This document shows, piece after piece, positions 1 to 48,015 of a DNA stretch of 48,015 nt (within the stretch, counting starts at the first letter, position 1; the number at the start of each line of letters is the position of its first letter). The stretch is taken from positions 1-48,015 of the forward strand of contig NIVC01004380.1 in the NCBI GenBank assembly GCA_002269645.1, in the 5' to 3' direction. Origin of the DNA: Macrostomum lignano (lineage: Eukaryota). The translations under genes were made by a program, and so were the position numbers. The notes beneath the pieces are model-generated. The model saw only the letters and a program-made list of their open reading frames with translations. It did not search any database and had not been told where the DNA came from.

Positions 1-1703
1 CAAGTAGACTCTCAATATCAGCATAAACCAAATACAGCGGCGGCAGTCGAGTCTCGTAGGCTGAAAAAGACAAAAGTGCTTTGCCCTCCTCTGGTAAAAC
101 CTCCTCCGTGACTGGCTTTGGCGTTCGAATGAAGCCGCCGCCGCCGCCGCCTGGTTGCTCCTCCGTCGTCTGGCCACACACGTGTTCTTTCAAGATATAA
201 TCCCAAGACGTGGTGTGAATAAAGCTCGCCAGACATTCAGGACAATAGCGCCGGCGTTTAGCACGAGAACTCAACAGCCTATCCAGATTTAGCACCGCCA
301 TGTAGTGTCCATACTTGAATTCTGCGTAAGGTGGTATGAACAGACAATTGACTGGCGCAAGGTCACCAGTGGAACGACGAAAATTAAAAAACAGCACGGC
401 AGTATTCGTGGCATGACTCCAGACAAACACACGCATCAGTCTAATTCGAGGGTTCAGCCGGCAAAACTTTCTGTAGCTCCCAATTGAGTGACGAGTCACT
501 CCGGCGCGCGTAAATCGAAAGCTTTTCAGCCAAGGCCTGTAAGACGCCTTTCGCCTTTTACGGGCTTGCCCTTCGACCTGTGAGGAAAAGACGCTCGACA
601 CGACAGCATACATAAAACAATCATGCTGATCTGCTCGGTGCGGGCGTAGAAACAAAACCGCTCCCGGCATACGACCAACAGCCAGTGGAACGCGGAATGG
701 AACGGAACGGGTCGGAGCGGATTCTGTTGGACCGCCGCCCGCCTGCGCGCCCGCCGCCGCCGCCGCCACGCCCGCCGCCACCACCACCGCCGCCCGCCAC
801 CCGCTCCCCACACGTCCTGCTGCTGTGCCGACGACTGCTAGTGTTCGACTGTAGTAGTAGATATTTTCGGCGGAATATGCACAGCATAACGTCGACCTTG
901 ACAACGCCGAGGAACTTCCAGTTACTACCTCGGGACTGAAAGTTGTCTAATTTAGCTACCAGATCGTTTGTTGCCTCGCTGTACCATTGGTTGAAAACGT
1001 CCTCAGAGAGAAGAAGTACACGGCGGCGCGGCGGCTGGAGCATTCGCATCGAAGGAGACCATAACGACTTTGGAATTGAAAAAGGGCGCGATTACTTCTA
1101 CCTCTTCGTTGTGGGGGATTCACCAACAGCCGTGTCATTGGCGGGGGGATAACGAGTACGATACATTTTTACATTAAGATGTATACATGTACGGAGTAAA
1201 CAGTCCGCAGATCCGAGAGAGTTAAAAAGACGAAAAAGTGGAACTTGCAGTTGTGGAAGTAACTCGCTGGGTGGTTCGGTCTCGCCATCGTCCTCGTCCA
1301 GCAGAGGCGTGAACGTCAGAAAGTTCGCCCGACCTCGGTGTGCGGACTCGGTATGTTGTACCGACCAGCCTGGTGGAGTGTCCTCTTCGATTAGCCGACG
1401 CACTGGTTCTCGAAGTAAAAGTTGGTCTGGTTGATAGCACGAGCCATTGTGCGAGTGCCCATGGAGGGCGGCTTGACTGTTGAATCTCTGCCGGCACACA
1501 GGGCATCTGATTTGTTTCGTCGTCGTCGTCGACGGCTGGAATGGTGTTGGCGATTGTTGGCGATGGGGTGGTTGTGATAATCGCCTAAATAGTTTGCTCG
1601 GTGGCAAAAATAAGGAAGGAATGCACAGCCTTAAGTTTGGTGGACAGTCCGAAAATGTCCTCCGCCGCGTGGTTAAACTGTATTTTACTTTGCAGAGATA
1701 CAA
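1..1703 (-). pseudogene. polB: Family B DNA polymerase, Maverick/adintovirus type, N-terminal half (frameshifted, truncated by window edge)
   Basis: Stitching frames gives: C2H2-like CPVCRQRFNSQAALHGHSH (~1510-1450); EVIAPFFNSKVV (~1095-1060); LDNFQSRGSNWKF (GSGW-type motif, ~950-915); HDCFMYAVVSSV (~625-590); YGHYMAVLNLDRLL...YCPECLASF...EHVC (~315-175); and Exo I VYADIESLL at 28-2. At least 3 frame changes (~1115, ~1030, ~740). The last frame is open from 946 to the edge and is absent from the ORF track. The start codon is not resolved. Confidence 0.82.
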
Positions 1704-1981
1704 TTATGTAGACAATTTGAATATTTAGGAATGAACAGCAGGCTAGTAAGTAGTAGGTCGTTGATGGTGGTTGAAAGAATAGTCAATGGTAGTGTTTTTA
1801 GGGGTCTGAATCAGTTCGAATGGATCATCATGATAAACAAAAATCGTTGGGTACGCATTGGAATTTTACCTTCAGGTAGTAATAGTGGTAGGTGGTGTTT
1901 TTTCAACTTGGTAGGGGCTCGGTTGAATTTAGGTGTTTATTACTACAGCAGAAAATCGTTGTTGTTAATATCAAGTGCATG

Positions 1982-3363
1982 TCAGAGCTCACGACGAATG
2001 ATGCCGCCAACAAGATGGGCTAGATCGGTCGTAGATGTATCCGATCTGATTAGAATTTCGTGTACGTTCGAGTAGTCCTGGTAGTGTCGTGTAAACGCCT
2101 CGTCTAGCGACCGTAGATAGTCCAGGGAGATGCCAGTCTCCTCACCGCTGCGTCCGCGCTGCGCGATGCGTTGAATGGCCAACTCCGGGTCAATGCGCAG
2201 GTAAATAAGCGTCGTGTTCGCGCCGGTAAAGGGTACCCCAGTCGCTTCGAGGACGTCTAGTTGGCGCTGAGCAATCGCCCATTCGGTGTCAGACAGCGAG
2301 CCTTGACGGTGTAGTACGTCTTGGAATGCTCGAGCCGACCCGAGGCAGCGGTCGAGGATAACCACCTTGTTGTTGGATTGTTGGTTAACCTCATTCCGGA
2401 CCTGGGTGGTAACACAAGATTGGCAAAAGTAGCTATACCGTGCGTGTCTTTCGACATTGGTTGTACATGCAGTAGGAGCTATACGAAAGGAATTGCTAGA
2501 TACTATAGTACCACTTACTTTGCTGTCTCTGTCGAGCAAGTCGTGGGAGACGTGCTGTTGGAATGCGACGGCCGGAAGCTCGCCTCGATAGAATGACTGA
2601 AGCAGATTTACCGAGTCCGGGAGGAGCGGGTGTCGCGCGTACTGGTGAACAGGCTCGGGACCGAAGACGGCTTTGTCGGCCCAACCCTCGAGGCGGGAGG
2701 TGAGAGCCAGTTCTCGAAGCAACGTCGACTTCCCGGCACCGATTACGCCCTCCAGGAGAAAAATGCGAGACTGGCTCGTCATATTGGCTAGAATTGGAAC
2801 AAATTCTGGTTTCGGAGCGGCTTCCTGACACAATTGTTTAACAATGTTGATCATTTCTAAAATCTGGCTAGTAGTCTTTGCACCTATTATAACGATCTTA
2901 AGGGAATGAAAAATATTGCACACCGTCCTATTGAGTGGAGCAGTACTACGGAGGGTGATGGCTTGTGGGAATATCTCCGCGTCGTAATACAGCCGAGCTG
3001 TGTGAAACGGCCCGATAAAGTTTTTCAGGGTCGAAAATTTGAGTCCAGGATAGTGGAGCAGACCAACGGTTGTAGAGCTGATTATACGAATCGATGTTTT
3101 GATTAGTTTAATTACTTTAAGGTGTATGAAATTCAGGGCACGTAGAAGTTGGACTCGGGATCTACAGCCATAAAGCGTGAGTAGTCCTCCGGGTAGAACT
3201 GACATGAAAATTGGGGCAGTCCGATACGAAGCATACTTGGCTTGGCGGAGTATAATTTGGAGGGGATTCCCGCCTGGCCTAGACGTTTTTTTAGCCTATT
3301 TAAATCTAACTTTTCTCCTGGAGGGGTACTCGTTCTGGCTTGCACTATTAGTAGGACCAATCT
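1982..3363 (-). CDS. TBP-like (two-repeat TATA-binding protein fold) domain fused to a deoxynucleoside/thymidine kinase; one frameshift near 3192 and one probable intron
   Basis: N-part LIVQ..GEKLDLNRL..YSAKPSMLRI..QFYP/GGLLTLYGCRS resembles TBP repeat 1, and YDAEIFPQ..IFHSLKIVIIGAK resembles repeat 2 (YEPELFPG..IFVSGKVVLTGAK). C-part has dNK motifs LEGVIGAGKST, PEPV, AFQ, ILDRC, IYLRIDPE..QRIAQRGR..E...SLDYL. Confidence 0.78.
2402..2518 (-). other. Predicted 117-nt phase-0 spliceosomal intron in the kinase domain
   Basis: Donor AAA|GTAAGT at 2518 and acceptor TGTGTTACCACCCAG|GTC at 2402. Removal deletes a 39-aa insertion and gives DLLDRDSK|VRNEVNQQSNNKVVILDRC, closer to normal dNK spacing. 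Confidence 0.65.
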
Positions 3364-3495
3364 CTGAAAAGAATAAATACGAGAAAAAATTCTGTATAAC
3401 GGTTAAGATTTTTATATATTTCTGGGTGATGCGTTTCCGTTTACGGAGAATGGTAGTTAGAGTTATAGGTATAGCTTCCCGCCACCAAGTGAACG

Positions 3496-4593
3496 CTAAC
3501 GGTCACTGTGCGAAGACTTCATCATCTTCGCTGTCCATGGGCTCCGTCGAGGCCCCGAGTCCACGTCCCCTAGCGCTGGGTTGGAGGCTGCAGCTTTACC
3601 CGCTTTGGGGACAGTATTGGTAACACCGCTTACAAGATCTTTGACGGGAGTCACCGTGATCCAGTCTTCAGCTGCTGCTGCTGTTGTTGCTGCTCCAGTC
3701 GTCTTGGTGGGGCGTTTGGCGGGGCTGCGACGAGTTGGGCCTTGTCGTCGTTTTCGTCCGCTAACTGGTTTCACTAGCGTCGTCGTAGTTGTTGACTCTT
3801 CTTCCTCAGTTGCGGCGGTGGCGGCGATTGGAGTCGACGTAGTTGGGATGTGAAAACGCAAAGCTTGGGCTAGCATCGGCAGGTGTTTCGGGTCGTCGTC
3901 GACCAGTGTCAGCGAGCGAAGGGCGAGGCCGAGGCGCCATGTCTTGCTTTCCTTCTGACGATAAAGACTTGTGAGCTGAACGGAGAGATGGTAAAGACCG
4001 CTAAGTCCCCTCAGCTCGCTTGTGTCAACTTCACGTGGGTGTTGATTAGGCAGTGCTCGAAAGGTGAAACATGGTAGTGTAGGTTTTATGGCAATCCACT
4101 GGGCAAAGCCCAGGTCGCCTTCCTCGGTGGCGCGGGAGATGCGAAGCAGCGGCATCGGATCGCCCATTTGCTTTAGTTTGATAGCGATGCCTCTTTCGAC
4201 TTGTCTAGCGAGAGCAAGGGGAATGAAAAGCAGTAAGAATTCATGGTCTAGTGAGTATGCACATGTAACAAGGATGGCGAATTCTTCAACTTACTTGATG
4301 CATTGTAGGAATTTGCTGCAAAAGGCCGATGATGACAGTCCGATGGCCACCGCCTCACGGTCTCCGGCTAAAAACTCTCCGGCATCCTGTATTTGGACAC
4401 CACGAAGAATCTCGACTGGGGTCGTGGTTTGAATCACTAGTGGGGACCTCCTGTCGACTTTGGGGGGCGTCCACGTTACGCTACGGAAGGTGCAGCTTGC
4501 TGTAGGAGCGTTGGGTTCGCCTAGGTGGAGATTACCAACGTCGGCTTGGATAGCACCCGGTTGGAATACGGATTCGGCAGCGAAACCAGCCAT
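3496..4593 (-). CDS. Two-exon gene (4593-4295 + 4204-3496), putative OB-fold ssDNA-binding protein with a low-complexity T/A/K tail
   Basis: ATG in ACACCATGG context. ORFs 4291-4593 and 3496-4167 share a frame; the intervening stop lies in CAA|GTAAGT, and a pyrimidine-rich acceptor ends at 4205 (90-nt intron). The spliced product reads FCSKFLQCIK|QVERGIAIKL. The SSB call is from a recalled pattern only (LVIQTT.P; YHLSVQLTSLY..WRLGLAL). Confidence 0.6.
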
Positions 4594-4680
4594 GGTGTTG
4601 ATCTTGCCTTGCTCGGAACGCGTGTTTGAAGTGCCTTCTATTTGGAGTCTTAATGAAGATTTTATTTCGTTTAGGGGTAC

Positions 4681-4690
4681 CTATTTTATA
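4681..4690 (-). promoter_or_regulatory. TATA-like box upstream of the SSB-like gene
   Basis: TATAAAATAG on the minus strand, ~90 nt upstream of the ATG at 4593. Confidence 0.35.
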
Positions 4691-5292
4691 GAGTTGTTTT
4701 TTAAGGGGGGCGTGGGATCGTTGAAGATTGTAGTTGGTCTTCTGGCTGGTGAATTCCCAGGGACTTTGACATTTTGTTAAAGAGTTTAGGGTTGGTGAGA
4801 TGCGATGCAAATATACGTGCGTTAAGAGATAATTTTGGCATTATAGTAGTGCGTGCAAATCGGTGAATTGATTTGACATGCTATTTAAGTTCACTAATTT
4901 GGTGTTCACTAGTGAATAGGAAATTGATCTCACTCGATGCGTTCGGGTTATAGTAGGCTAGGGTCGGTGAATTGACTGCATGCATTTCATGGGCGTAAAT
5001 TGCGTGCTCATTGCTGGATTGATAAAAATTTGGAAATGCCTGCACCCTAGTTTGGGTCACGGGTGACGTTTTCCCATAGAGGTCGGTTTGTAGAAAGATA
5101 CCGAAAGGGGGGTTTTTACTGGCTTCGGCATTGAGTGGTTGGTTGACAGCGCGGCGCTATCTATATGCTATATGCCGATAACGGAAATTGTGCAATCCCC
5201 CGCGTGGGTTGAGTTTCATATGAAGGGGAGATCTAGGTCATTGAGTTAGAGAGGAGACTTGGAACTGTTCGAACGATAGATTGCGAATGACA

Positions 5293-6747
5293 ATGGCCGA
5301 GGCTCAGGACGGATCGCGGGAAGAGTATTGGAAGGCACAGGAGGGATACTTTGAAGAATTGGAACGCAAATTCGCTTTCGTGGACTACGGTAGCGATCGA
5401 CTCCGACGAGTGTCGCCCTTGAGTAGACCGTCTGGTAAGTATAGTTTTTTATGACTGCCACTCCTCTTGTATGGCACCGTATTTTGATAGGGCATCATAT
5501 ACCGACTTCAGTAGACGGGCAGCAAGACCTCCGTCCGGTCGCGGTAGTTCCGCCTAGTGTGCGTGGCCGCGAGGATCCCTATGACGGGGAAATTACTATA
5601 GGGAGGAATACGTTCCCACCAAGGACAGAGGTATGTAATATGCATTCTGAGTTCGATTGCTTTGTGGTAGTATAACTTACTATGCCTTCATCTACTGGTA
5701 GGATTACTTCAACGCAAGGACGGCAGCTTTGGAGGAGCTACGTGAGGGGCGACCCGAGGTTCGCTATCGTGACGCGGGTTACGACGTAAGATTGATTTTT
5801 AAGTTAGTAGTGCCTGAGCTTGTACTTGACGAGTTCATTTTGCCTTTTTTAGCAACTATGCATGAGTGACCGAGTAGTTTTGCAGCACCAGTGGGCGACG
5901 GCAGTTTGTACGCGAATGCATGAACTGGTGCCGGAGATGGTGGCTCGGGGAAGGGAGGTACGAGACAATATTCGTATGCTTTTCTTATCACATATTGCAT
6001 TAATAAATAAAGAATTTCCATTCTCATTTTAGGAGTTTTTAGCCATGGTGAGTGGAGATGTGCTTTTTGGTGTGGTATAATTCACTCGTCCGTATGAAAA
6101 TAAATTTACTTGTCTGTTCTTTATTCTTGAATCGTAGATTCGCGGACGTGGTCGTCGGACTCGAAACGAGGTATGGATATTGTTATTTTAATTGAGTGTG
6201 ATCCTAGTTCAATATTGTAGCCCAGTTGTATTTTCTGCTGTTGCATATTCCAGGCTGCGTGTGTTTCGTCCAGCCCCACACAGCTTACAATGGTCAGTAG
6301 TCGCTTGGCATTGATTAAACATTTAAGATATAAAGGCTGGAATCTTATTTGACATTTCAGGCGAATTGCGCGATCGGAGAAGGGCGAGCTCCCGGACCAC
6401 CGCAGCCATGTGTCCCGGTTAGTGATACATCGAAAACCATGCTCTTTATTTTGGCGGTATGTACATAAGTAGCTCGGTTTGGGAGGTGCTCTTCACGTGC
6501 CGGTTTAAGATGGAGTTACGAGGTTTTATGGTAGTAGAATTCGTGTTATTTAGTGTGAGACGGGACCGTTAATGCATGAACCAGTTCTACTTTATGCTGC
6601 CACGCATTCAAGACTGCATGGCATTGATTAAAACTTGAGGGTGTAAAACAGTTGAAATCTTATTTTTTTAAATTGCAGACAAATTTCGTGTTCGGACGGG
6701 GGCGGACTCCTGGACCGCCGCAACCTTCCACGGTTGGTGTTACGTAG
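5293..6747 (+). CDS. Predicted 9-exon gene (~240 aa), unknown function
   Basis: Exons 5293-5434, 5491-5630, 5702-5785, 5853-5957, 6033-6047, 6138-6170, 6254-6292, 6361-6456, 6679-6747. All 8 introns are GT..AG (56, 71, 67, 75, 90, 83, 68, 222 nt), the frame stays open across every junction, and seven introns are phase 0. The product has an internal repeat: EEYWKAQEGYFEELER..FVDYGSDRL vs EDYFNARTAALEELRE..YRDAGYDQL. Confidence 0.68.
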
Positions 6748-6870
6748 AAGAATATGCTCTTCTTTGTAGGGTGTTCACAGTCATATCGGGTGGGGGGGGC
6801 AGGTTGGTAGTGGTTTAGGGTGAAATATGCAAGTCTATGGTGGTAGAGTTTGTGTTACAACAAAGAGTTA
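6305..6870 (+). repeat. Diverged tandem duplication of an intron-exon-intron module (~6305-6560 and ~6620-6870)
   Basis: Both copies begin ggcattgattaaa..aatcttattt..cag and encode G.GR.PGPPQP...MLF. Confidence 0.75.
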
Positions 6871-7994
6871 TTTATACAATCAAATTTCAGATTCCGAAGC
6901 CGCCATCCGGAAGTGGATTCCCTGGTGGTGGTAGGGTTAGTAAATTTTATATTGATTGCAGCGTAGTAAATTGACCTGGTAAATGTATGTCATCTTCTTT
7001 GGTTTCAGGATGCGGACCTGTCGTAGGCATTCGGGACTCGGCGTGTGGGTTGGTTGACTCCGTCGCCGCCGTCGGCTTGTTTATGTGGACTGTAGGGGAC
7101 TTGTATTTGTAAATGTTTCGTATGCGACTTTTATTCAGTGAAGGCTTGGACATATGTGTCTATTTATTCTTTTGGATTCGCTCTGTGTGCAGTATCGTAC
7201 ATGTAAATACAGTGTGGCGTAGATCCAAGGCCTTCGTTCGATGTAAGGGCTTGCCAGCGGGGTGTCTGTCTTGTTGTGTCATCGGTGGAAATATAGCGTT
7301 GTTAAAGGATAGGTTTGGATCTTGTTTGTCTTAGGGCTAAAGAGAGGGGTGATAAACTCGGGGTTTGAGTTTTCGGTGGTGTGGTTAGTTCTAGGGCTTC
7401 TGGGGTGGGGGGTCTGTATTATGGGGTCTGGTTTATCTCAAGTGGGGGGTGAAGCATGGGGGGTGGGAGTCGAATCACCCCGGGGGAATCTTAACGCGGC
7501 AATATTTTTTAAATCGCATGTAATTTGCTTTAGTTCTTTAAATTCAACTTTTATTCAATTTTATTTTATTTACTTGTTAAAAACTTTTAATACACAAATG
7601 TACCGGTTCGTCAATGAATGTATTAAAACTTGTAGTGCTAAAATACACGGATTCGATGTTGGTTGAAGTAGCTACTGAAGCCGGCGTTCAATCGAGAGGG
7701 CGGATAAGATAAACAAAAGTGCAAGATATGCATATGTAGATGCCGCGGAGACGGATGAAAAGTAACAGAAAATATGCGAAAAAGTATAAGTACGAATATG
7801 AGTGGTTGGTATCGAGGTTTTGAGTTCTATGGGTAAAATATTGAAGCCTAGTGACGGTCCCCCTGGTTCTAATCTGTACTACATAAAAATGGAAAATACT
7901 ATCCTGATCCTAAAATTGTAGACGTTTCGAGAAGTTTAACAATACAGCATAATAATGTTTGTTAGCAGGTAGGCGAGTACACTTAATGGCGGAT

Positions 7995-8576
7995 TCAGTC
8001 AATCAACACGGCCGTGGACGATAGTGGAAAGGTCGGCATGGACGGCGAGCGTGGTGTTGAGGTCCATGTTGGGGCAGCACGGCGGTTTGGGTTCGGTCCG
8101 GGTGAAGGTGTTTCGGTGCTGACTCTGCAAATAAGAGCGGAATGCTTCGGTAGTTGGGGGCCATGTTTCGGATAATGATTAGAATTTACTTACGTCTGAG
8201 TGGCTTGAGAATACTCTTGGCTACGGAAGTCATTCGGACGGCGGGACTCGGGAGAGCGGATGCGTTTGTAGCAGTGGTGAATCAAAGCGAGCACCAGGAA
8301 CAGAAAAATAATTAGACAAACGACCTTCAGGGCCACCAGTTGCGTACTTGCTAGGTTGATTAGTTTGTTGACGCTTTCTCCGATTGCGGTAACCATTTGG
8401 GTATTATTGTATGCCTGGACGGCTATACGATTTCGGAGCTCTTCTTGGGAGTAATGGGAATTCTCGGATAATTGTCTGACAACTGCCGAAAGTTGTCGGG
8501 TAGTTTCCGCGTTGTTTTGGGTGGCTTGGGCCTGTTTAATAAACACAGCCAGTATTTTTTGTAGTCGGTTCGCCAT
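7995..8576 (-). CDS. Small single-pass membrane protein: coiled-coil N-terminus, TM helix, basic then Pro/Ser/Thr-rich tail (2 exons: 8576-8194, 8124-7995)
   Basis: TM segment LVALKVVCLIIFLFLVLALI followed by HHCYKRIR. The ORF stop at 8190 lies inside donor AC|GTAAGT; acceptor CTCTTATTTGCAG ends at 8125 (69-nt intron). Splicing adds TVSTETPSPGPNPNRRAAPTW...AVLID*. Confidence 0.62.
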
Positions 8577-9065
8577 TAAGATGGTTATACGAGACTCGGT
8601 GAACTAATAATAAACTTGCCAGACTATTCACTCGAGAATCCGACTTGACGCTGTTTTTAGCGCTTGCGTCTAGAAGTTTGTATCTGTTCAAACCCTCAAG
8701 TCGTGGGGAGGGGTGGGGGTGGGGGGTAAAGGTTGTGCGCGGGTGGTTGATGAGAATCGGATTTTAATCGATTAATGTGGCGGGGGAGTGTACATTTCGC
8801 TGTGTGCGCCCTAGCGTTTGGGGTAAGGTCTTTTCTCGGAAATGTAGCACTTATGGTCCGGCGGGAACGGAGTATGGATCGTAGAGTTGGTATAGAATGC
8901 AAGTGGTTTATTTACGGAGCAAGTGGTTATTATGATCTATTCAATATCTATTACTGGAAGTGACGCAAGCCGCGCTCGTGGATAGTGTTGCCTAAGGCCG
9001 AGTAAAGCGTATACCTTATCGTGCGTTTAACACGGTTTCGGAATTTGAAGTGCTTGGTGAATAGT

Positions 9066-9467
9066 CTATTGGTTTCCACCTACTCGGGTGCGACTGCGAG
9101 TATAAGATAAGTAGGGGTACGATTTGTAGGCGGCTCGCTTGAGCGTGTTAGGACGGGTGGGGACTGTATTCATTTTTACATGTAAAAATGAGGGGTGCGT
9201 GTAATATACTAATACTACTAGCGTGTTGTCGAGTGTGGTCTGATTCCCTTCAGCTGGCGGGGGCAGAGCTCGGATTATGTCTGCAATTTCTTTCCCTGCT
9301 GTGTAGCTTAGCAGCTTGCACCGTTGGTTTTCATTGGTGATGCCCGAAGCGTCAATGAAATCTTGAAAGCGTGCTGACCACTCGCTCCAGCGTTTGCCAG
9401 CATTGTGAGGGTCGCTAATAATTGAGAACGGCTCTGGTGGGGGTAGTGAAACGTAGTTAGTGCCCAT
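9066..9467 (-). CDS. Gypsy-type gag N-terminal domain-like ORF (~133 aa), not followed by pol or an LTR
   Basis: MGTNYVSLPPPEPF..AGKRWSEWSARFQDFIDASGI..QRCKLLSYTAGKEIADII..LVYYTHP matches the W..W..RF / LL...G gag N-terminal pattern of many invertebrate Gypsy elements. Confidence 0.62.
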   Translation of the reverse strand: MGTNYVSLPPPEPFSIISDPHNAGKRWSEWSARFQDFIDASGITNENQRCKLLSYTAGKEIADIIRALPPPAEGNQTTLDNTLVVLVYYTHPSFLHVKMNTVPTRPNTLKRAAYKSYPYLSYTRSRTRVGGNQ

Positions 9468-9676
9468 TGCCCTCGCGTAGGTTTGTGTGTTTGCGACGCC
9501 ACTGTAGGAAGTCTGACAAGCCGTGTGAGTTTGCTTGGATCGATACAGATAGCAAAGTTCCAAATACGAGTAAATGCCAATGCGTGTATTTAAATATTAG
9601 TCAATGGGGGGTTGGCGCGTGCATGGTTAGAGAGTTGAATGTACGCCGATATAGAATGACACTGCTAAGGCGCAAG

Positions 9677-12600
9677 CCTACAATCTCTACAATCTCATCT
9701 CTCCTTTCTCCCCTCTTCTTACATCCCTCTCTTATCTCTATTATCTCTATCTCTTCTCTTCTCACTCTTCTCTCCCCCTCTTATCTTCTCTCTTCTCTAT
9801 CCTTTCTACTCTCTCCTCTCCTCTTGACCCTCTGTCATCTTCTTTCTGCTCTCTCATCTCTACTCTTTTCTCACTCTTCTCTACTCTCCTCTCATCGATC
9901 CTCTGTCTCATCTCTCCCCCCCTTCTCACCTTTACTCTTTCCTCTCCCTCCTTTCTCCCCTCCTCTCGCTTCTTCCTCCTTTCTTCTCTGCTCTCTCCTC
10001 ACCACTTGTCTCTTCTCTTATCTTCCATGTTTTCTCTTATCCCCGTCCCGCCTCTCCTCTCTTCTAATAGTCTATTCCGTCTCCTTTCCACTCTCATCTG
10101 GCCCGCACATAAGCTGGATTCTTTATCTGGCTTTTGAAGTAAAAGTCTGCCGATCACTGCTTCGAAAGCCAGTTTGTGGGACGTACTACTCTCATCGTTA
10201 TTCTCATGCTTTGATCACGTCATCTTTCTTGCCAATTTGCAGCCCTGAAAGGAATTTGTGTATCTTCAGCTCCACTGCAGTCTGCATCAGTCTAACAACC
10301 AAGGAAATACGCATTTCTTAGGCCATTTAAATTTCAAAGTACTTTTAAGAGAAACTTAAAATTTCCATGGTGTGCCTAATTTAGTAGGGTTGTATTTCAT
10401 TGCATCGCATCACCTTTTCATAAATATTTCGCTTTTACAAACCATGCTGGATTGCCTCGATTTGCCAATTGCCATCCACTGTTAAACTGCTGCAGAGTTT
10501 GCCTATACAGAGGGGAGGGCAGTGGTTAGAATTTCTCACTAAACTGTTATGGCTAAACGTAGCCTCTCGACTCTCGGGGTGCGAGAAGGCTATGAAAAAA
10601 GTTATTCCAAAACACTGTACATTTGCTATGTACATTCAGTCCTATCGCCTGACCCTTCGTCTGAGCTGGGGGAATGAGTGAGTGAGCGGCACAAACAACA
10701 GAAAAAGCAGACAAACTTCACATGCTTACAGTTTCTGTCCTGATTAAGATACAGAGTTGAGACTTTACATGTAGGCAGAAAATGAGTCAATAAAGAATTG
10801 TGTCAAATTTGAAGTCAATCGCTTCACGTGGAGCAAAACTATGGCAGCCGAAAGTTAGGCATTTTAAAACCTATTCACACCCTTTGCCAGGGATAGCGAC
10901 GTTTGCCTGCGGGACGTTTGCCAGCCGACGTTTGCCTGCGGGACGCTTGCCAGCCGACATTTGCCAGCCGACGTTTGCCAGCCGACGTTTGCCAGCGGGA
11001 CGTTTGCCAGCCGAAGTTTGCCTGCCGGACGTTTGCCAGCCGACGTTTGCCTGCGGGACGTTTGCCAGCCGACATTTGCCAGCCGACGTTTGCCAGCCGA
11101 CGTTTGCCAGCGGGACGTTTGCCAGCCGAAGTTTGCCTGCCGGACGTTTGCCTGCCGAATGTTTGCCAGCCGACGTTTGCCAGCCCACGTTTGCCAGCCG
11201 ACGTTTGCCAGCGGGACGTTTGCCAGCCGAAGTTTGCCTGCCGGACGTTTGCCTGCCGAATGTTTGCCAGCCGACGTTTGCCAGCGGGACGTTTGCCAGC
11301 CGAAGTTTGCCTGCCGGACGTTTGCCTGCCGAATGTTTGCCAGCCGACGTTTGCCAGCCGACGTTTGCCAGCCGACGTTTGCCAGCGGGACGTTTGCCAG
11401 CCGAAGTTTGCCTGCCGGACGTTTGCCTGCCGAATGTTTGCCAGCCGACGTTTGCCAGCGGGACGTTTGCCAGCCGAAGTTTGCCTGCCGGACGTTTGCC
11501 TGCCGAATGTTTGCCAGCCGACGTTTGCCAGCCGACGTTTGCCTGCCGGAAGTTTGCCAGCCAAAATTTGCTAGCCAATATAAAGCCAGTCAGTGAAAAA
11601 TTTGATACTGAAACATTCGCAGTTTAGCGGTTTGACAAAAACCGTTTTTACTCCAACTTTTTGACGGTTATTCGCATGTATACAAGTTTGAAAGCAAAAT
11701 ATATAAATTATGCAGTTCATCAGTCTAACGTCTAATATCTAGTTTAACAACGATTTTGGCACAACATATCAAAAGATGAACATTGGGTTTGCCTCGTATG
11801 AAAGCAATAACAATTGTTGTGCTGAAAAGATGAAAACTTCCTATCTCCCTATGGCCTTCAAAACATTTTTCATAGATTTCGAGTGCTGCGTACTTCTACT
11901 TTAGTAGTCCTTGGCATGACTAAGCTTTGCATACGTAGTGTCTAGCGCTTGCTATTCTACTAGCTTGCTACTGGTGGCTTGTCTGGCTTTCAGCTATATA
12001 GCTTACTATAAAAACGTACCGCATTCGACTCGTCTACACATGTACGTTGAGATCGCGGTTTCCTTGCTTACTTGAGTAGTAAAAAAACAGCATTGGAATC
12101 AATTTGCTTACTTTTAGATCTCCCAATGAACTGAGAAATATATGAGCCAGAATTACCGCTCAGCAGCTCTTTTTGTTTGCCTCATAACTTAATCGCTGGA
12201 GATTCCCGTTGTAATCTGCGCGTCTTCTTTCGCACATCAAAAATCAAACATCTCAAACTGGGAAAAACGATACACAATTGTCAAAAGTAAACAATATTTT
12301 CACATTCAAAGAAAATCGTTGTTAAACTGGATATTAGATGTAAATCTATATAAATTGCATAATTTATATAGATTTTGCATAAATTTCATAATTTATATAT
12401 TTTGCTTTCAAACTTGTATATATGCGAATAACCGTCAAAAAGTTGGAGTAAAAACGGTTTTTGTCAAACCGCTAAACTGCGAATGTTTCAGTATCAAATT
12501 TTTCACTGACTGGCTTTATATTGGCTAGCAAATTTTGGCTGGCAAACTTCCGGCAGGCAAGCGTCGGCTGGCAAACGTCGGCTGGCAAACATCCGGCAGG

Positions 12601-13358
12601 CAAACGTCGGCTGGCAAATGTCGGCTGGCAAACGTCCGACTGGCAAACGTCCCGCTGGCAAACGTCGGCTGGCAAATGTCGGCTGGCAAATGTCGGCTGG
12701 CAAATGTCGGCTGGCAAACGTCGGCTGGCAAACGTCGGCTGGCAAACGTCCCGCAGGCAAACGTCCGGCAGGCAAACTTCGGCTGGCAAACGTCCCGCTG
12801 GCAAACGTCGGCTGGCAAACGTCGGCTGGCAAACGTCCCGCAGGCAAACGTCCGGCAGGCAAACTTCGGCTGGCAAACGTCCCGCTGGCAAACGTCGGCT
12901 GGCAAACGTCGGCTGGCAAACGTCGGCTGGCAAACGTCCCGCAGGCAAACGTCGGCTGGCAAACGTCCCGCAGGCAAACGTCGTAGACCCCCTTTGCCCA
13001 GATCGGTATCGGGAAAGAGAGGCAGGCGGGCGGAGGTTGGGGTGGCTGCCTCGCTGAAAAAAACAGCCTAACTTTAAAAGTGCACAGCACCGCTCAGGAT
13101 TAACTTTGAGACTCGAAATTTTACATGATTGTGCCAAAATAGTTGATCGCGCATTTTGAGCAGTTTTTTGTACTTTTAGGCAGGAAGACTTGATTCTAGG
13201 AAATTTAAAGGTAGCCTAAGACATTCTCCGTAGTAAGTTTAGGGTGGGTGTAAAGTTTGGTGTCATTTGGTTGAGCGGTTTGGGAGTCCATAGCGAAGTA
13301 ATTTGTCCACAGACAGACAGACAGACAGACAGACAGAGTTTTGATTTTTAAATGTAGA
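9677..13358 (-). mobile_element. Non-autonomous Helitron-like unit L1 (3'-truncated), interrupted by a foldback element
   Basis: CT-rich block (9677-10090), a conserved core shared with L2, and (ACAG)n near a 5' terminus TCTACATTTAAAAATC at 13358. This layout resembles Lep1-like non-autonomous Helitrons. Confidence 0.55.
10890..12990. mobile_element. Foldback-like non-autonomous DNA transposon (2.1 kb) with long modular inverted arms
   Basis: Arms ~10890-11756 and ~12312-12990 are inverted copies built of 14-15-bp GTTTGCCAGCCGAC-type tandem repeats plus ~190 bp of unique sequence. Ends GGG...CCC. TSD cctttgcc(c)a at 10881-10889 and 12991-13000; single-copy empty site at 19160-19169. Confidence 0.85.
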
Positions 13359-15694: not shown

Positions 15695-18283
15695 TTAACG
15701 CGGTCGATTGCAACGCTCGTAGGTGTTGCAGCGACCTCGCGCACGAAGAGCAGCCTTCAGAGAGCGATGTGCTCGCTCCACTAGACCATTGGCTCGGGGG
15801 TTATACGCTGAGGTTCTTATGTGATGGATGCCGAACAGCTTAGTAAACTCTTCCATGAGCTCTGCACGGAACTGGGCACCCTGGTCCGTAATGAGCGTCA
15901 GGGGTGGGCCAAAGCGTGACACCCAGGCGCTGAGGAATCCTTGAGCTACAGATGCGGCAGAGATGTCTATCAGCGGAATGGCCTCCAACCATCGGGTGTA
16001 GGCGTCGATGACTGTCAGTAGATAACGTGACTGTAGTTGACCGTTAGCCTCTGGTGGTGTTAGTGGTCCGACAATATCCATGTGTACCGTCGCGAATCGC
16101 TGAGAGGGAGTCGGTAACTGGTGTAATGGTCGGTGTACATGCTGAGTTACTTTGTTGGCTTGGCATTGTAGGCATTCCTCCGTCCAACGGCGCACATCGC
16201 GAGAGATCTCCGGCCAGAAGTAGCGATGGGTGATCAATCGACAGCTCGCCTTGACACCAGGATGGGCCAATGAATGAATCGATGTGAAGATGTGTTTTCG
16301 CAAGTCTGGTGGAACGACTGGTCGCGGATTGGGGTATGACGTTTCGCAGAGCAGTTTACAGTCAGTCAGTCCGATTTCGAACAACTTGAAAGTGCTGGAT
16401 TGCGATGGCAACGTTGAATCCAGCTGTTGAGCGCGTGCAATTGCGGGCAGGTCAAAACTGGGCAACATTTGAGTGTCTTCGTCCGTTGGGGCTATCTCAT
16501 GAGCGGCCGCGACCAGAAATTCTGATGTTGCGATGTTGACAGCGTCTTTCGAGGGACGGGACAGCGCATCAGCAACGACGTTGTCTTTACCGGCGATGTG
16601 AACCACGTCCGTGACAATCTCTGAGATTGCTGACATCTGGCGCTGCTGTCTGTCCGAGAAGCGTTCCTTGCTGCTTGCAAAGGCTCCGATAATTGGCTTG
16701 TGGTCGCAGAATACCGTCACTGTCTGGCCTTGCAGCAGGTGCTTCCATGCCTTGATGGCGGCGAAGATAGCAAGTAGCTCCCGGTCGAAGGTGCTGTATT
16801 TAGTTTCGGTGTCGGAAAGTTTTCTGGACAGAAACGCGAGAGGCGTAGAGTCGCCGTCTACGACCTGGTGCAGACAGGCACCGATCGCCATGGCACTGGC
16901 ATCCGTTGTTACTGTGAAGTTGGCCTCCGGATGCGGAAAAGCGAGAGTGACCGCGTCAGCGAGCGCGTCTTGCAGCGCCCGCCATGCCTGGTCATGTTCT
17001 GGGAGCCAACTGAAGGTGCCGTGCAAAAGTTGTCGCAGCGGGAGTAGCAGCTGTGCGTAGTGCTGAATGTGGCGTTGGTAAAAGCCGAACATGCCGAGGT
17101 ATCGCTGCAACTCCCTGCTGTCCTTGGGTGGAGGAAGAGCACGTAGGGCGTCGACTCGATCGGACAGCGGTCGGATCCCGTCTCCAGAAATCTGATGGCC
17201 CAGGAACTCGATTGTATCCTGATAGAATTGGCAATTGTGAGGGCTTACACGCAGTCCGTTGTCGCACAGGCGTTGCAGTACGGCATGTAGATGTGTCTCG
17301 TGCTCCTCGCGGCAGGTGCTGTGGATCAGAATATCGTCAATGTAGGTGACCACGAATGGCATGTCGCGGAAAATCGCGTCGACGAACCGTTGAAAGGTAC
17401 TGGCCGCGTTGCGTAGTCCAAATGGCATGCGCAGATACTCAAACGAACCGAATGGCGTGCAAACTGCAGTCTTCTCTATGTCCTCCGCCGCGATGGGTAC
17501 GAAGTGGTAAGCTTTGACAAGGTCAAGCTTACTGAAAACCCGTGACCCGTGAAGTCGATGGTGAAAGTGTCCGATGTGGGGTATCGGGTAGCGATCTGGC
17601 TTGGTTACTGCGTTGAGTGCGCGGTAGTCGCCGCAGGGACGCCACGAGCCGTCCTTTTTCTTCACCATGTGAAGAGGGGACGCCCATGGACTGGCGGAAG
17701 GTCGCACGATGCCGAGCTGCAGCAGTTGGTCAAACTCCGCCTTCGCTGCGTCGAACTTGGCTGGAGGGAGCGGACGAGGTCGGCAGAATAGCGGCTTGCT
17801 GTCGGTAATTATCTGGTGGCTGACTGTGCTAGACGAAGGTGCGGACGAATAGTCTGGGGCTTCTGCTAGCTGCGGGAAAGCATCAAGGGGTGTCGCTAAC
17901 ACTTCCGATGTTGCTAGCACCTGTGGGGCTGAGTCTGCTGTTGCTTGAAGAGCTGCATGAAGTTGAGTAGTCGGGTCATGCAGACGTCTGTTCCGCATGT
18001 CAATAAGGAGACCGAACTTAGCCAGGAAGTCGGCTCCCAGAATCGGCGGTGTATCAGCAACGATGAAGTTCGCGGGAAACAGGCGGCGTAGCTCTGGGAC
18101 TGCGACAGACAGTGAGCACTGACCGAGAGTACTAAATTCGCGACCATCGACGCTGCGTAGCCGGACCTGCGTGGGTGCCAGCAGGTGGCGAGGTGCAAGG
18201 TCCAAAGGCAGCAGGGAGCGCTCAGCACCGGTGTCCACAACAAAACGAACCGTTTTTCCGAACAATTTACAGGGTAACAACAA
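15695..18283 (-). CDS. pol: Gypsy pol: protease-RT-RNase H-integrase (integrase C-terminal part internally deleted)
   Basis: VVDTGAE; [29 protein letters not shown]; [25 protein letters not shown]; HHCC (HSLAHPG..CLQC); [22 protein letters not shown]. The C-terminal [14 protein letters not shown] follows in another frame. Confidence 0.95.
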
Positions 18284-20256: not shown

Positions 20257-20666
20257 GCACAGCGTCATTGAATAAAGCATAGATCAAGGCGTCTGTTGAT
20301 TAAAATCGGAGCACAGCAAAAACAGCACTGGGGACACAAAAAGCGACTGACCAACACTGTAGCCAAGCTGAAGAACAAAAAAGGAGGTGCGATTTCCTGC
20401 AAGCCCTATTGTATGAAGACAATAATTTTAAGTGTTACAGTTACAAAAGTTCATGAGTTAATGAAATTAGTTATCTTTATTTTTAAGCATTTGTCGAGTT
20501 AAATGTTTTAATTTTGAAAACCTATGAAATTCTTATTTAATACAGATGCTCGTATACAGTAGATATTAAAATGAAATATATTACGTGTTACGTATATATC
20601 AGATAGTCTTTCACTCACTCTTCCTTGGGCCACCGACCCCACAGTCATGTGCTACTCGCGACGATT

Positions 20667-21473
20667 AGTGACCAGCCAGACACGAAGAGACACATTGAGA
20701 CAATTGGCGAGCAAGGCGAGCAACGCGCGGGAGGCGCACAGCGAAAAAGCGACCTCCAAGCTATGTATTTTACGAGTATAACGAGTTACAAGCAAAAAAT
20801 TGAGATAAAAGCAGAAATTGAATTAAAAAAAAACTCAAGCGGAGAGCTGCGCGCAAATTGAGTCAGAAAACGCGGTGAGAGGCTCACCTAAAAAGGCTAG
20901 CAGGCGGAGGGGGGGTGGGGGCCAGCCCCCACCCCACACAGATGCACAGAGACAGCAAAGGGGGCGGGCTGATCACTAAAGCCGGTTTGCACAGGCGCAA
21001 GCACCCATGCAAACCAAAGCATTAGTGACCAGCCAGACACGAAGAGACACATTGAGACAATTGGCGAGCAAGGCGAGCAACGCGCGGGAGGCGCACAGCG
21101 AAAAAGCGACCTCCAAGCTATGTATTTTACGAGTATAACGAGTTACAAGCAAAAAATTGAGATAAAAGCAGAAATTGAATTAAAAAAAACTCAAGCGGAG
21201 AGCTGCGCGCAAATTGAGTCAGAAAACGCGGTGAGAGGCTCACCTAAAAAGGCTAGCAGGCGGAGGGGGGGGGTGGGGGCCAGCCCCCACCCCACACAGA
21301 TGCACAGAGACAGCAAAGGGGGCGGGCTGATCACTAAAGCCGGTTTGCACAGGCGCAAGCACCCATGCAAACCAAAGCATTAGTGACCAGCCAGACACGA
21401 AGAGACACATTGAGACAATTGGCGAGCAAGGCGAGCAACGCGCGGGAGGCGCTCAGCGAAAAAGCGACCTCCA
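20667..21473 (-). repeat. 3' split-repeat block, ~2.3 copies of a 357-358-bp unit
   Basis: ttagtgaccagcc recurs at 20665, 21022 and 21380; the A segment is repeated again at 23659-23854. Confidence 0.95.
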
Positions 21474-21514
21474 AACCCAAAGCAAGCAAGCAAACAAAAG
21501 CAGAAGGCGAGGAG

Positions 21515-22470
21515 CTAAAACAAAGCAGAGACACCACCGGCAAAAGTCACAGCAGCCTCCGCTGCCTGGTGAAACTGGGGGAGATAACGCTGCACAGCCT
21601 CACTTCTCCAGTCACCAATGCGCATGATATCAGACACTGGGAGGCCTAGCACAGACGCCCAGGTAGCTCCTCCTCGTCGCAGACTGTGCGCGGAGTAAGA
21701 TCCTGGTCGAACGCCGGCTGCGGCAAACTTGTCACGGAGGAAGCAGTCCAGGTGCCTCCCAGTCAGCAGGCGCAAGCCGCCACTTCCGTCGGCGTAGGAC
21801 CAGAGCGGTGACTCTGCTGACTTCAACCCGTTGGCGCGGATGTGTCGCTCGACTGCGCTCACAGGGCACAGGGCTGGCTGCCGCGCCAATCTCGGCAGCA
21901 GTACCCGGTGACTGCGCTCCTTAAACTGGATGGTCTTGCCGAACTCGCAGCGCAACACCAGACCCTTCGGATGCTGAAGCAGGTCGGCGCGCCGGGAAAG
22001 GGCCGGGCCTTTGCCAGTTCGCGGCAGAAGGCTGGACTTTCGCAACATTCCCCACCAGCAGCAGATGGTCACAGCCCAGCAGGCCAGCTGCAGCCTGTCG
22101 GTCTCGTCAACTAGTCGTCGCATCTCCGTCAGCATTGTAGGTGACACAGGCCGCTTTCGGTTCACGCGCAGTCCGAGGACCCGTTTAGCGCCGCGTAGGA
22201 GAAGAACCGCTGAAGCGTGCTTAGTCAGGTCCGGCGACGAGTTTATTCGAAACCAGAGCGACAGAGAGCTGCAGACTGCCGAGATGCTGCTGTAGGCATG
22301 TAGCCGTGTGCCGATCAGACTGGCCAAATAGTTCAGCAGGCTCGTGACGTTGCAGGACACTGGATCGCAGCCGGTATGGCGGCAGAACTCCTGCCACTCA
22401 CGGATGTGTCTATTGACTGCCTGCGCCGACCGCGGTGCGTACGCAGCGCTCAGCAGCGATGTAGCGCGGC
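21515..22470 (-). CDS. Tyrosine recombinase (DIRS/Ngaro type)
   Basis: CWWGMLRKSSLL, YSAHSLRRGGATW, IGDWRSEAVQRY. The frame stays open upstream of the annotated 22360 start (AYAPRSAQAVNRHIREWQEFC), overlapping the end of RNase H. Confidence 0.92.

Positions 22471-33106: not shown

Positions 33107-48015
<14,909 letters not shown>

What the first reader, a model, noticed from the sequence alone, without database searches (positions are those of the whole stretch)
1982..3363. TBP-like domain fused to a deoxynucleoside kinase
Seen: two TBP-like repeats (KLDL; YDAEIFP; IFHSLKIVIIGAK) run in frame into a P-loop dNK. Repeat 2 keeps both DNA-intercalating Phe positions, while repeat 1 appears to keep only one aromatic. 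I know of no described TBP-dNK fusion. Inference: a virus-encoded promoter-recognition factor or TBP decoy tethered to nucleotide salvage.
Basis: partly seen in the sequence, partly recalled or inferred. Interest (0 to 1): 0.85.

Follow-up and report, generated by a model that had tools for sequence, protein, structure and literature searches.

The report
Flatworm Maverick TBP-like gene joined to kinase
A virus-like transposon (Maverick/Polinton type) in the flatworm Macrostomum lignano carries its own divergent TATA-binding-protein gene, and in this lineage that gene's reading frame runs straight into a captured deoxynucleoside kinase; the join is real in the DNA, but it is broken in this copy and may not be the main protein made.

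Summary
On the minus strand, window 3363..1982 encodes a TBP-family double repeat, then a 13-residue linker, then a Drosophila-dNK-type kinase, with no stop between them. In this copy one frameshift splits repeat 1. A near-identical paralogue (L002) has an intact 459-codon frame.

TBP homology is firm:
- Pfam TBP scores above its cut-off on the intact copy.
- A three-sequence profile hits only TBPs in the PDB (E 2e-13, both repeats).
- An AF2 model (pLDDT 87) matches only TBPs in Foldseek.

The gene is not a host gene. It lies 5.9 kb inside a TIR-bounded Maverick/Polinton-like element of about 21 kb, with protein-primed PolB, dUTPase and an rve-chromo integrase. The window holds the left 9.2 kb of that element.

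A diverged sister lineage (L003) and a metagenomic relative (L006) carry the TBP-like gene alone, ending in a stop. The dNK is therefore a lineage-specific addition.

The public transcript-based annotation starts the dNK mRNA right after an AG, 5 nt before the dNK's own ATG. This suggests a separately trans-spliced kinase.

No other TBP-dNK protein was found. I judge this a new variant of a known kind, of moderate interest.

The parts
1..9219 (-). Left 9.2 kb of a Maverick/Polinton-like element of about 21 kb. The element continues beyond window base 1.
   Evidence: Window 9219..1 aligns to L005 987..10238 at 98.4% identity. Homology stops exactly at the left TIR of L005, and the flank differs, so this is a separate insertion.
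9155..9219 (-). Left terminal inverted repeat of the element
   Evidence: The L005 arms 986-1050 and 22031-22095 are 65 nt long and 94% complementary. The window alignment starts at L005 987.
3634..4167 (-). Upstream conserved coding block (178 codons from the ATG). It is a candidate exon 1 and ends at a phase-0 GTAAGC donor.
   Evidence: 32% aa identity to L003. The homology ends exactly at the L003 GTGAGT donor. No Pfam family hit.
3364..3633 (-). Candidate intron 1, or an outron. It runs GT..AG over 270 nt and contains a TATATAAAAA box at 3409-3418, 55 nt before the acceptor.
   Evidence: Sequence read. The TATA match in L005 is at 6802-6811. There is one indel against L002. The public g1 gene model reads through the donor into this segment.
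1982..3363 (-). The TBP-like-dNK gene body (exon 2, intron 2, exon 3). It is broken by one frameshift in this copy.
   Evidence: Apart from one 1-base indel, exon 2 is identical to the intact 459-codon frame of L002.
2819..3363 (-). TBP-like double-repeat domain (holds the frameshift)
   Evidence: Pfam TBP. PDB profile search E 2e-13 over both repeats. AF2 pLDDT 87 and Foldseek top 43 hits all TBP.
2783..2818 (-). Proline-containing linker with no stop codon. It contains a candidate SL trans-splice acceptor AG at 2788-2789.
   Evidence: The P0001 CDS begins at the first full codon after this AG.
1982..2782 (-). Deoxynucleoside kinase. Its own ATG is at 2782-2780, intron 2 is at 2402-2518 and the stop is at 1984-1982.
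   Evidence: Pfam dNK E 4e-24. PDB best hits are Drosophila dNK 1j90 (E 7e-10), dCK and dGK. P0001 supports the splice.
1098..1703 (-). C2H2-type zinc-finger ORF, the next element gene
   Evidence: Weak Pfam C2H2 hits, below cut-off. 43% identical to the L003 homologue. Two indels against L002.
1..1049 (-). N-terminal region of the endonuclease-VII and protein-primed PolB gene. It runs off the window.
   Evidence: The L002/L005 homologue carries PF02945 and PF03175. Five indels against L002, four of them frame-changing.

Best explanation
SHOWN. The region is the early or accessory part of a Maverick/Polinton-like endogenous virus-like element of Macrostomum lignano. The element encodes its own highly divergent TBP-family protein with two repeats and a saddle fold. 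That gene belongs to the element clade: it is also present, standing alone, in a sister lineage and in a metagenomic relative. In the window's lineage, an intron-containing Drosophila-dNK-type kinase sits directly downstream. The TBP-like stop codon is absent, so one open frame covers both. The window copy carries one frameshift in TBP repeat 1, while its kinase part is intact.

INFERRED. Two products are made from one pre-mRNA by alternative 5' processing:
- The first is a TBP-like protein that carries the kinase as a C-terminal extension. Its start comes from the upstream exon (in-frame GT..AG) or from the AUG that ends the M. lignano spliced leader. Both are in frame at the conserved acceptor.
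- The second is a stand-alone kinase from an internal trans-splice site 5 nt before its own ATG.

INFERRED FUNCTION. The TBP-like protein seeds RNA polymerase II initiation on the element's own core promoters. The kinase, with the element's dUTPase, feeds and cleans the dNTP pool for the protein-primed polymerase. In the window copy only the kinase product remains possible.
For: Host and copies:
- The dNK hits are M. lignano proteins. The window is 98.4-98.8% identical to two Mlig_3_7 loci.

TBP family:
- Pfam scores 29.6 bits against a cut-off of 22.9 on the intact copy, and 31.2 bits on L003.
- The A1 profile hits 35 TBP chains in the PDB (best E 2e-13) and nothing else below E 0.3.
- The AF2 model has pLDDT 87.2, and the Foldseek top 43 hits are all TBPs with TMq 0.64.

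Element:
- pPolB with EndoVII, and dUTPase.
- An rve+chromo integrase.
- TIRs in two lineages.
- A different flank at the window's TIR.
- pPolB relatives lie in elements with rve, Pox_A32 and VLTF3.

The TBP-like gene is ancestral and the dNK is derived:
- L003 has the exon 1, TBP-like, ZnF and pPolB homologues but no dNK. Its TBP-like frame ends in a stop right after the repeat-2 helix.
- L006 has a stand-alone 169-aa TBP next to its pPolB.

Splice and SL model:
- The homology blocks between the lineages end exactly at the donor and begin exactly at the acceptor.
- Neither lineage has an ATG before the structurally conserved Met inside repeat 1.
- The published SL ends in ATG (PMC8629364).

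Separate kinase mRNA:
- P0001 is Mlig012932g2, annotated 'partial', and its CDS starts at L002 6001, just after the AG at 5997-5998.
- Genes within a transcriptional unit were cut at experimentally mapped trans-splice or poly(A) sites (PMC5730564).

Kinase motifs:
- The P-loop, the catalytic Glu, a DRC triplet in place of ERS, and the Arg-rich lid all align to Drosophila dNK.
Against: - No transcript or peptide data could be read here, so both products are inferred.
- The public g1 model reads through the proposed donor. This argues against efficient exon 1-exon 2 splicing in the sampled RNA.
- No annotated or Logan-derived M. lignano protein contains the TBP-like part, so its expression is unproven.
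- An SL joined at the internal site would place the SL's AUG out of frame, 5 nt before the kinase ATG, which is not ideal for translation.
- Canonical TATA boxes are not enriched in the element: 5 found against 4.5 expected in L005.
- The TBP-like gene and the exon-1 block are the fastest-evolving genes of the element, at 37% and 32% identity against 59-74% for the core genes.
- The three dNK-bearing copies are too alike to test for selection.
- The AF2 model was built from an alignment of TBP-family proteins, so it leans towards that fold.
Confidence: 0.5

Rival explanations
1. Obligate bifunctional fusion. The main or only product is a single TBP-like-dNK polypeptide whose two activities are functionally coupled, for example a kinase tethered at promoters, or a TBP decoy dimerised through the kinase.
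For: - There is no stop between the domains.
- The 13-residue proline-containing linker looks like a domain linker.
- All three copies keep the same frame across the junction.
- The dNK-family relatives in the PDB have the same compact single-domain size, so a fusion is sterically plausible.
Against: - The fusion is absent from the sister lineage and from the metagenomic relative.
- The kinase keeps its own ATG at the position where free-standing dNKs such as P0003 start.
- The transcript-based annotation starts the kinase mRNA just upstream of that ATG.
- No other TBP-dNK protein was found among 4986 TBP-family representatives. Only the top 150 were inspected, and 10 long ones were scanned.
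Confidence: 0.15
2. No fusion protein at all. When the kinase was captured, the TBP-like gene lost its stop and its function in this lineage. The TBP-like stretch is now only outron or 5' sequence of a kinase transcription unit and is starting to decay. Only the kinase is expressed.
For: - The window copy has a frameshift in the TBP-like part but none in the kinase.
- L001 has lost repeat 1 through a rearrangement, yet keeps an intact kinase.
- The only two differences between L001 and L002 in this gene are non-synonymous changes in the TBP-like part.
- The public annotation has a kinase CDS but no TBP-like CDS.
Against: - L002 keeps about 190 TBP-like codons open and carries no damage at all.
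- The copies are so young (99.8% or more identical here) that there has been too little time for decay to be informative.
- The window copy also has frame-changing indels in the neighbouring ZnF and pPolB regions, so its break is not specific to the TBP-like part.
Confidence: 0.25
3. The single-base frameshift is an assembly error, and the window copy is in fact intact like L002.
For: - Exon 2 is otherwise base-for-base identical to L002.
- The M. lignano assemblies are based on long reads (PMC5730564).
- Indels far outnumber what would be expected from so few substitutions in the coding parts.
Against: Indels are spread across the whole 9.2 kb and include several in neighbouring genes. This fits a decaying copy equally well. 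No raw reads could be examined.
Confidence: 0.3
4. A host TBP paralogue or pseudogene that happens to lie next to a host kinase, or a chance resemblance to TBP.
For: Flatworms do have TBP paralogues (PMC13134418, title and abstract listed).
Against: - The gene lies inside a TIR-bounded element found at three or more different loci.
- It is syntenic with pPolB in a lineage that is only 37% identical.
- It is only 20-24% identical to cellular TBPs.
- The profile E-value of 2e-13 excludes chance.
Confidence: 0.03

Closest known systems
Cellular TATA-binding protein core (Pfam PF00352; e.g. PDB 1cdw, 4wzs, 1ytb)
   Same: - Two tandem repeats of about 85 residues, with the same strand and helix order.
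- The profile and fold searches return only TBPs.
- Repeat 2 keeps both kink-inducing Phe residues and most of the acidic-x-hydrophobic-Phe-Pro stirrup that aligns to the TFIIB-contacting stirrup of TBP. The role of that stirrup comes from established TBP structural knowledge.
   Different: - Only 20-24% identical.
- Repeat 1 has Tyr instead of Phe at both kink positions.
- The gene has no ATG of its own.
- It is encoded by a mobile virus-like element.
- In one lineage its frame continues into a kinase.
- DNA binding is untested.
TBP-like proteins of large DNA viruses (BFVD hits: Heterosigma akashiwo virus 01 putative TBP, Moumouvirus TBP-like protein, abalone asfa-like virus B263R homologue, Chionoecetes opilio bacilliform virus putative TBP)
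   Same: They are virus-encoded, very divergent TBP folds. Foldseek probability is 1.0, with E values from 3e-5 to 4e-4 for the best hits.
   Different: Those viruses are giant viruses or nimaviruses with large genomes. Many of them have their own RNA polymerase (my own knowledge). The present element is about 21 kb and no RNA polymerase gene was seen in it.
[quoted passage not shown] 2021, PMC8502044, Fig. 5 legend)
   Same: A TBP-like gene sits in a midsize linear dsDNA, polinton-related genome that has a protein-primed PolB.
   Different: It is mentioned only as a figure label, in a section on datasets from non-animal eukaryotes. No fusion to a kinase is described. Sequence relatedness to the present gene was not tested.
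Drosophila multisubstrate deoxyribonucleoside kinase and human dCK/dGK (PDB 1j90, 2a2z, 2ocp)
   Same: Best solved-structure relatives of the kinase part. The P-loop, the catalytic Glu and the Arg-rich lid all align.
   Different: - The alignment score is low (42 bits, E 7e-10).
- A DRC triplet replaces ERS.
- The gene is carried by a transposon-like virus.
- It shares a frame with a TBP-like domain.
Maverick/Polinton elements (adintovirus-like)
   Same: - Protein-primed PolB, rve integrase and TIRs.
- A size of about 20 kb.
- A Ulp1/adenain-like protease, supported only weakly.
- Multiple insertion loci.
   Different: - It carries a TBP-like gene, dNK, dUTPase and a C2H2 ORF.
- An endonuclease-VII domain sits on the PolB.
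- Spliceosomal introns are present, and the host spliced leader may be used.
- The capsid and ATPase assignments were not confirmed by any library.

Membership tests
TBP family (PF00352) | Score above Pfam's gathering cut-off | tested here: met
   The cut-off is 22.9 bits.
- Intact paralogue N-terminus: 29.6 bits.
- L003: 31.2 bits.
- L006/P0040: 52.5 bits.
- Window 137-aa piece: 22.9 bits, at the cut-off.
- Whole window ORF: 19.7 bits, below the cut-off.

TBP family (PF00352) | Two tandem repeats forming one core | tested here: met
   Pfam finds 2 stretches. The PDB alignments span query residues 12-176 against the full TBP cores. In the window copy, repeat 1 is split by one frameshift.
TBP family (PF00352) | Saddle fold | tested here: met
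   The AF2 model of the window piece (part of repeat 1 plus repeat 2) has pLDDT 87.2. The Foldseek top 43 PDB hits are all TBP, with TMq up to 0.64. Caveat: the alignment behind the model was made of TBP-family sequences, and the first half of repeat 1 was not modelled.
TBP family (PF00352) | Four kink-inducing Phe residues on the DNA face | tested here: inconclusive
   Repeat 2 has Phe at both positions. Repeat 1 has Tyr/Tyr in L002, Phe/Tyr in L003 and Tyr/Phe in L006. All four positions are aromatic, but not all are Phe.
TBP family (PF00352) | Binds and bends TATA DNA; recruits TFIIB/Brf | not testable with these tools
   Only the alignment of the repeat-2 stirrup motif is available.
Deoxynucleoside kinase family (PF01712) | Pfam score above cut-off; P-loop, catalytic Glu, ERS/DRH-type motif, Arg-rich lid | tested here: met
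   Pfam scores 85.9 bits against a cut-off of 27. In the alignment to 1j90, the P-loop, the Glu-Pro-Val segment, DRC (in place of ERS) and the lid arginines all align.
Deoxynucleoside kinase family (PF01712) | Phosphorylates deoxynucleosides | not testable with these tools
Maverick/Polinton | [quoted passage not shown] | tested here: met
   PF03175 scores E 7e-21 on the L002/L005 homologue. The window holds only its N-terminal region.
Maverick/Polinton | Retrovirus-like (rve) integrase | tested here: inconclusive
   In L005 18348-19490, rve scores 30.3 bits against a cut-off of 32.6 (E 5e-7), and Chromo scores 25.2 against 25.1. The gene is 62% identical in L003. It lies outside the window.
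Maverick/Polinton | Terminal inverted repeats | tested here: met
   The TIRs are 65 nt at 94% complementarity in L005 and 108 nt at 95% in L003. The left TIR lies at window 9155-9219. Target-site duplications were not identified.
Maverick/Polinton | Double jelly-roll capsid, A32-type packaging ATPase, adenain-like protease | tested here: inconclusive
   Pfam gave no hits. The protease ORF weakly matches the ASFV S273R cysteine protease (E 0.008). The ATPase-like and capsid-like ORFs gave no significant PDB match.

The most novel reading that the evidence does not exclude
An animal Maverick carries its own basal transcription factor, a TBP paralogue whose start codon is supplied by the host's spliced leader. 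In one young lineage this factor is expressed as a true TBP-deoxynucleoside-kinase fusion. That would be the first TBP joined to an enzyme, and the first sign that Mavericks bring their own promoter-recognition machinery.
Probability: 0.2. Interest if true: 0.7.

Novelty: new variant of a known kind. Interest (0 to 1): 0.5.

Why it matters
Mavericks/Polintons are usually assumed to rely entirely on host transcription. A conserved element-encoded TBP paralogue in an animal Maverick clade would suggest that they partly control core-promoter recognition themselves, as giant viruses and nimaviruses do. It would also give a concrete route to finding how these elements are switched on.

The locus also shows a gene fusion at an early stage: a captured, intron-containing kinase and a lost stop codon, seen next to a sister lineage without the kinase. 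In addition, it raises the possibility that a virus-like element uses the host spliced leader's AUG to start its proteins.

For annotation, the practical point is that the TBP-like part is missing from the public M. lignano protein sets found here.

Tried and rejected
- Short intron instead of a frameshift. I looked for a short GT..AG intron that could bridge the two frames of repeat 1. The only candidate is a multiple of three, so it cannot change frame. I rejected this idea, and the comparison with L002 shows a plain 1-base indel.
- AF2 with a 7-sequence alignment gave pLDDT 49, which is unusable. It was replaced by a 97-sequence alignment.
- Nimavirus or giant-virus insertion was my first guess. 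I rejected it because the polymerase is protein-primed PolB and the element is about 21 kb with TIRs.
- Host TBP pseudogene. I rejected this on synteny within the element.
- Selection analysis among the three dNK-bearing copies was uninformative, with 0-2 differences. Between lineages, divergence is too deep for dS.
- Canonical TATA boxes are not enriched in L005. The excess in L003 is mostly (TA)n runs.
- The TBP-like gene was not detected in L004 or L007, so it is not universal among relatives.
- Literature searches found no TBP-dNK fusion. They also found no mention of TBP in two Maverick/Polinton papers.
- One broad literature search was badly specified and returned only general TBP papers.
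- PDB sequence searches did not confirm the capsid or the ATPase.
Full report
**What is at the coordinates.** The gene lies on the minus strand.
- A 407-codon open frame ends at window 1982. Pfam finds a deoxynucleoside kinase in it (PF01712, E 4e-24) and, upstream in the same frame, a weak TBP match at residues 72-122 (PF00352, 19.7 bits).
- The motif KLDL and the first half of TBP repeat 1 lie in another frame.
- The kinase part contains a 117-nt GT..AG segment (2518..2402). It is in frame and has no stop, and the public model P0001 removes it.

**Whose DNA it is.** The only close protein hits are from Macrostomum lignano: P0001 (BOX15_Mlig012932g2, partial) and a UniRef model, P0002. Two loci of assembly GCA_002269645.1 are 98.5-98.8% identical to the window. 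The rest of the window is repeat-rich eukaryotic DNA. It holds an LTR-retrotransposon pol, Helitron pieces and TC-rich simple repeats.

**The break.** Paralogue L002 has an uninterrupted 459-codon frame that runs from the acceptor through both TBP repeats and the kinase. Against it, the window's exon 2 differs by one 1-base indel and nothing else. Exon 1 has 2 substitutions and exon 3 has 1 synonymous substitution. The window copy therefore has one frameshift in this gene, inside repeat 1. Its neighbours also differ from L002 by indels: 2 in the zinc-finger ORF and 5 in the pPolB N-terminal region, 4 of them frame-changing. I could not tell whether these are mutations or assembly errors. The third copy, L001, has lost repeat 1 through a rearrangement that joins the gene to inverted capsid and protease sequence from the far end of an element.

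**Is the N-terminus TBP?** Yes.
- On the intact natural sequence, Pfam TBP scores 29.6 bits against a cut-off of 22.9, in two stretches.
- All 30 PDB phmmer hits are TBPs aligned over both repeats.
- A profile of three element-borne homologues (L002, L003, L006) hits 35 TBP chains, with a best E of 2e-13, and nothing else below E 0.3.
- An AF2 model of the window's own 137-residue piece was poor with 7 sequences (pLDDT 49) but good with 97 (pLDDT 87.2, pTM 0.78).
- The top 43 Foldseek PDB hits for that model are all TBPs (E 1.5e-5, TMq 0.64).
- In the viral library, the best hits are giant-virus TBP-like proteins, with a weaker nimavirus hit further down.
- In the HMMER alignments, repeat 2 keeps both kink Phe residues and most of the stirrup motif. 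Repeat 1 has Tyr at both positions in L002.

**The kinase.** The best solved relatives are Drosophila dNK (1j90, E 7e-10), dCK and dGK. The P-loop, the catalytic Glu and the Arg-rich lid align to them, and a DRC triplet stands where ERS normally is. The nearest database relative outside M. lignano is 26% identical (P0003). It sits on a metagenome scaffold with ribonucleotide reductase and a YqaJ exonuclease, which looks like a giant virus.

**Context: a Maverick/Polinton-like element.** Downstream on the same strand lie, in order:
- a C2H2 ORF;
- a gene with endonuclease VII and protein-primed PolB (PF02945, PF03175);
- a dUTPase;
- a P-loop ORF;
- an rve+chromo integrase;
- a 440-aa capsid-like ORF;
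- a Ulp1/adenain-like protease, supported only by a weak match to ASFV S273R.

TIRs bound the element: 65 nt at 94% in L005, giving about 21.1 kb, and 108 nt at 95% in L003, giving about 19.6 kb. The window matches L005 only from the first TIR base inward (window 9219..1), and the flank differs, so the window holds a separate insertion. The pPolB relatives at 27-33% identity come from metagenomes and invertebrate genomes. Two of them lie in loci that also carry rve, one with Pox_A32 and VLTF3 as well.

**Fusion or neighbours?** A second M. lignano lineage, L003 (pPolB 59% identical), has homologues of the upstream block (32%), the TBP-like gene (37-39%), the zinc-finger ORF (43%) and the rest of the element. 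It has no kinase, and its TBP-like frame ends in a stop just after the repeat-2 helix. A beach-sand metagenome contig, L006, has a stand-alone 169-aa TBP (Pfam 52.5 bits) beside its pPolB and an rve gene. The TBP-like gene is therefore ancestral in this clade, and the in-frame kinase is a recent addition.

I searched for the same architecture elsewhere and found none:
- The hits to the whole ORF carry only dNK domains.
- The hits to the TBP profile carry only TBP domains and are 128-196 aa long.
- An exhaustive HMMER search found 4986 TBP-family representatives. I inspected the top 150 by length and scanned ten long ones, which held TBP only.

**How the proteins might start.** Neither lineage has an ATG before a Met that is invariant within the three-sequence alignment A1 and lies inside repeat 1. 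Yet sequence conservation begins exactly at the acceptor, and the upstream block's conservation ends exactly at a GTRAG donor in phase 0. Two readings fit:
- Cis-splicing of exon 1 to exon 2, which is in frame in both lineages.
- Trans-splicing of the 35-nt M. lignano leader, which ends in ATG (PMC8629364) and would be in frame in both lineages.

A TATATAAAAA box lies 55 nt before the acceptor. The public g1 model reads through the donor, which speaks against efficient cis-splicing.

**Evidence that the kinase is made on its own.** In the Mlig_3_7 annotation, transcriptional units were cut into genes at experimentally mapped trans-splice and poly(A) sites (PMC5730564). P0001 is gene g2 of unit Mlig012932. 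Its CDS is 5'-partial and begins at L002 6001, the first full codon after an AG at 5997-5998 and one codon before the kinase's own ATG. Had the transcript extended further upstream, the open frame would have been called further upstream. This is indirect evidence, but it points to a kinase mRNA that starts at window 2787.

**Most likely mechanism.** What is shown is a Maverick-borne TBP paralogue and a captured dNK that share one frame. I infer three things. The TBP-like protein nucleates Pol II initiation on element promoters. The kinase and the dUTPase support protein-primed replication. Alternative 5' processing yields both a long TBP-like-kinase protein and a free kinase. In the window copy only the free kinase could be made. 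My confidence in this composite explanation is about 0.5. The obligate-fusion reading gets about 0.15, and the reading in which the TBP-like part is already dead gets about 0.25.

**Novelty.** Viral TBP-like proteins are known. A 'TBP' gene label also appears in a figure of MELD viruses with adintovirus-like PolB (PMC8502044). I found no description of a TBP-like gene in an animal Maverick, of a TBP-dNK frame, or of Mavericks in Macrostomum. I rate the finding as a new variant of a known kind.

Noticed in passing
window 3363 and L003 8478 (acceptors); window 2787: Two element genes have no ATG of their own before conserved coding sequence: the TBP-like gene and the zinc-finger ORF of the window lineage. 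For the TBP-like gene, the coding sequence starts right after an AG acceptor. The M. lignano spliced leader ends in ATG, which would be in frame for the TBP-like gene in both lineages. A virus-like element may be borrowing its start codons from the host leader.
   Followed up: partly
L001 4425-5692 (minus strand), joined to the TBP-like gene at about 5690: In copy L001, the first TBP repeat is replaced by inverted capsid-like and protease ORFs from the far end of an element. This is a rearranged or nested copy that still keeps an intact kinase.
   Followed up: partly
L003 (pPolB and P-loop ATPase-like genes): The sister-lineage copy L003 has at least one frameshift in its pPolB gene and one in its ATPase-like gene, seen as split tblastn hits. 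Its TBP-like frame is unbroken.
   Followed up: no
window 9066-9563 (minus strand): An open frame runs across the element's left end at 9219. To my eye its outer half looks Gag-like, which would mean the Maverick inserted into another retroelement. Pfam gave no hit.
   Followed up: partly
window 8190-8576 (minus strand): A 128-aa ORF with a C-terminal hydrophobic segment lies just inside the left TIR. It has no family match.
   Followed up: no
window 10897-11576 and 12523-12983: Two arrays of the same 14/29-nt tandem repeat (GGCTGGCAAACGTC and its complement) lie in opposite orientation about 1 kb apart.
   Followed up: no
window 15695-18283 (minus strand): LTR-retrotransposon pol frame with protease, RT, RNase H and integrase (Pfam).
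   Followed up: yes
window 25748-30824 (minus strand): Helitron remnants: a Helitron_like_N domain and Pif1-type helicase pieces, split over several ORFs.
   Followed up: partly
window 20664-21474 and 21515-23650: A 358-nt tandem repeat (2.3 copies, 99% identical) lies next to ORFs that look by eye like a tyrosine-recombinase (DIRS/Crypton-type) element. Pfam gave no hit for the 281-aa ORF.
   Followed up: partly
window 33200-48015: A unit of about 2-3 kb recurs at least six times. It consists of TC-rich simple repeats, 30-nt GAAATCCTCTCCGTGAAACTG... repeats and short TTAGGG/GGTTAG arrays. It produces a strong negative GC skew.
   Followed up: no
L008 (metagenome scaffold holding P0003): The nearest non-flatworm relative of the kinase lies among ribonucleotide reductase, YqaJ exonuclease, RNase T and glycosyltransferase genes. 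This looks like a giant-virus contig.
   Followed up: no
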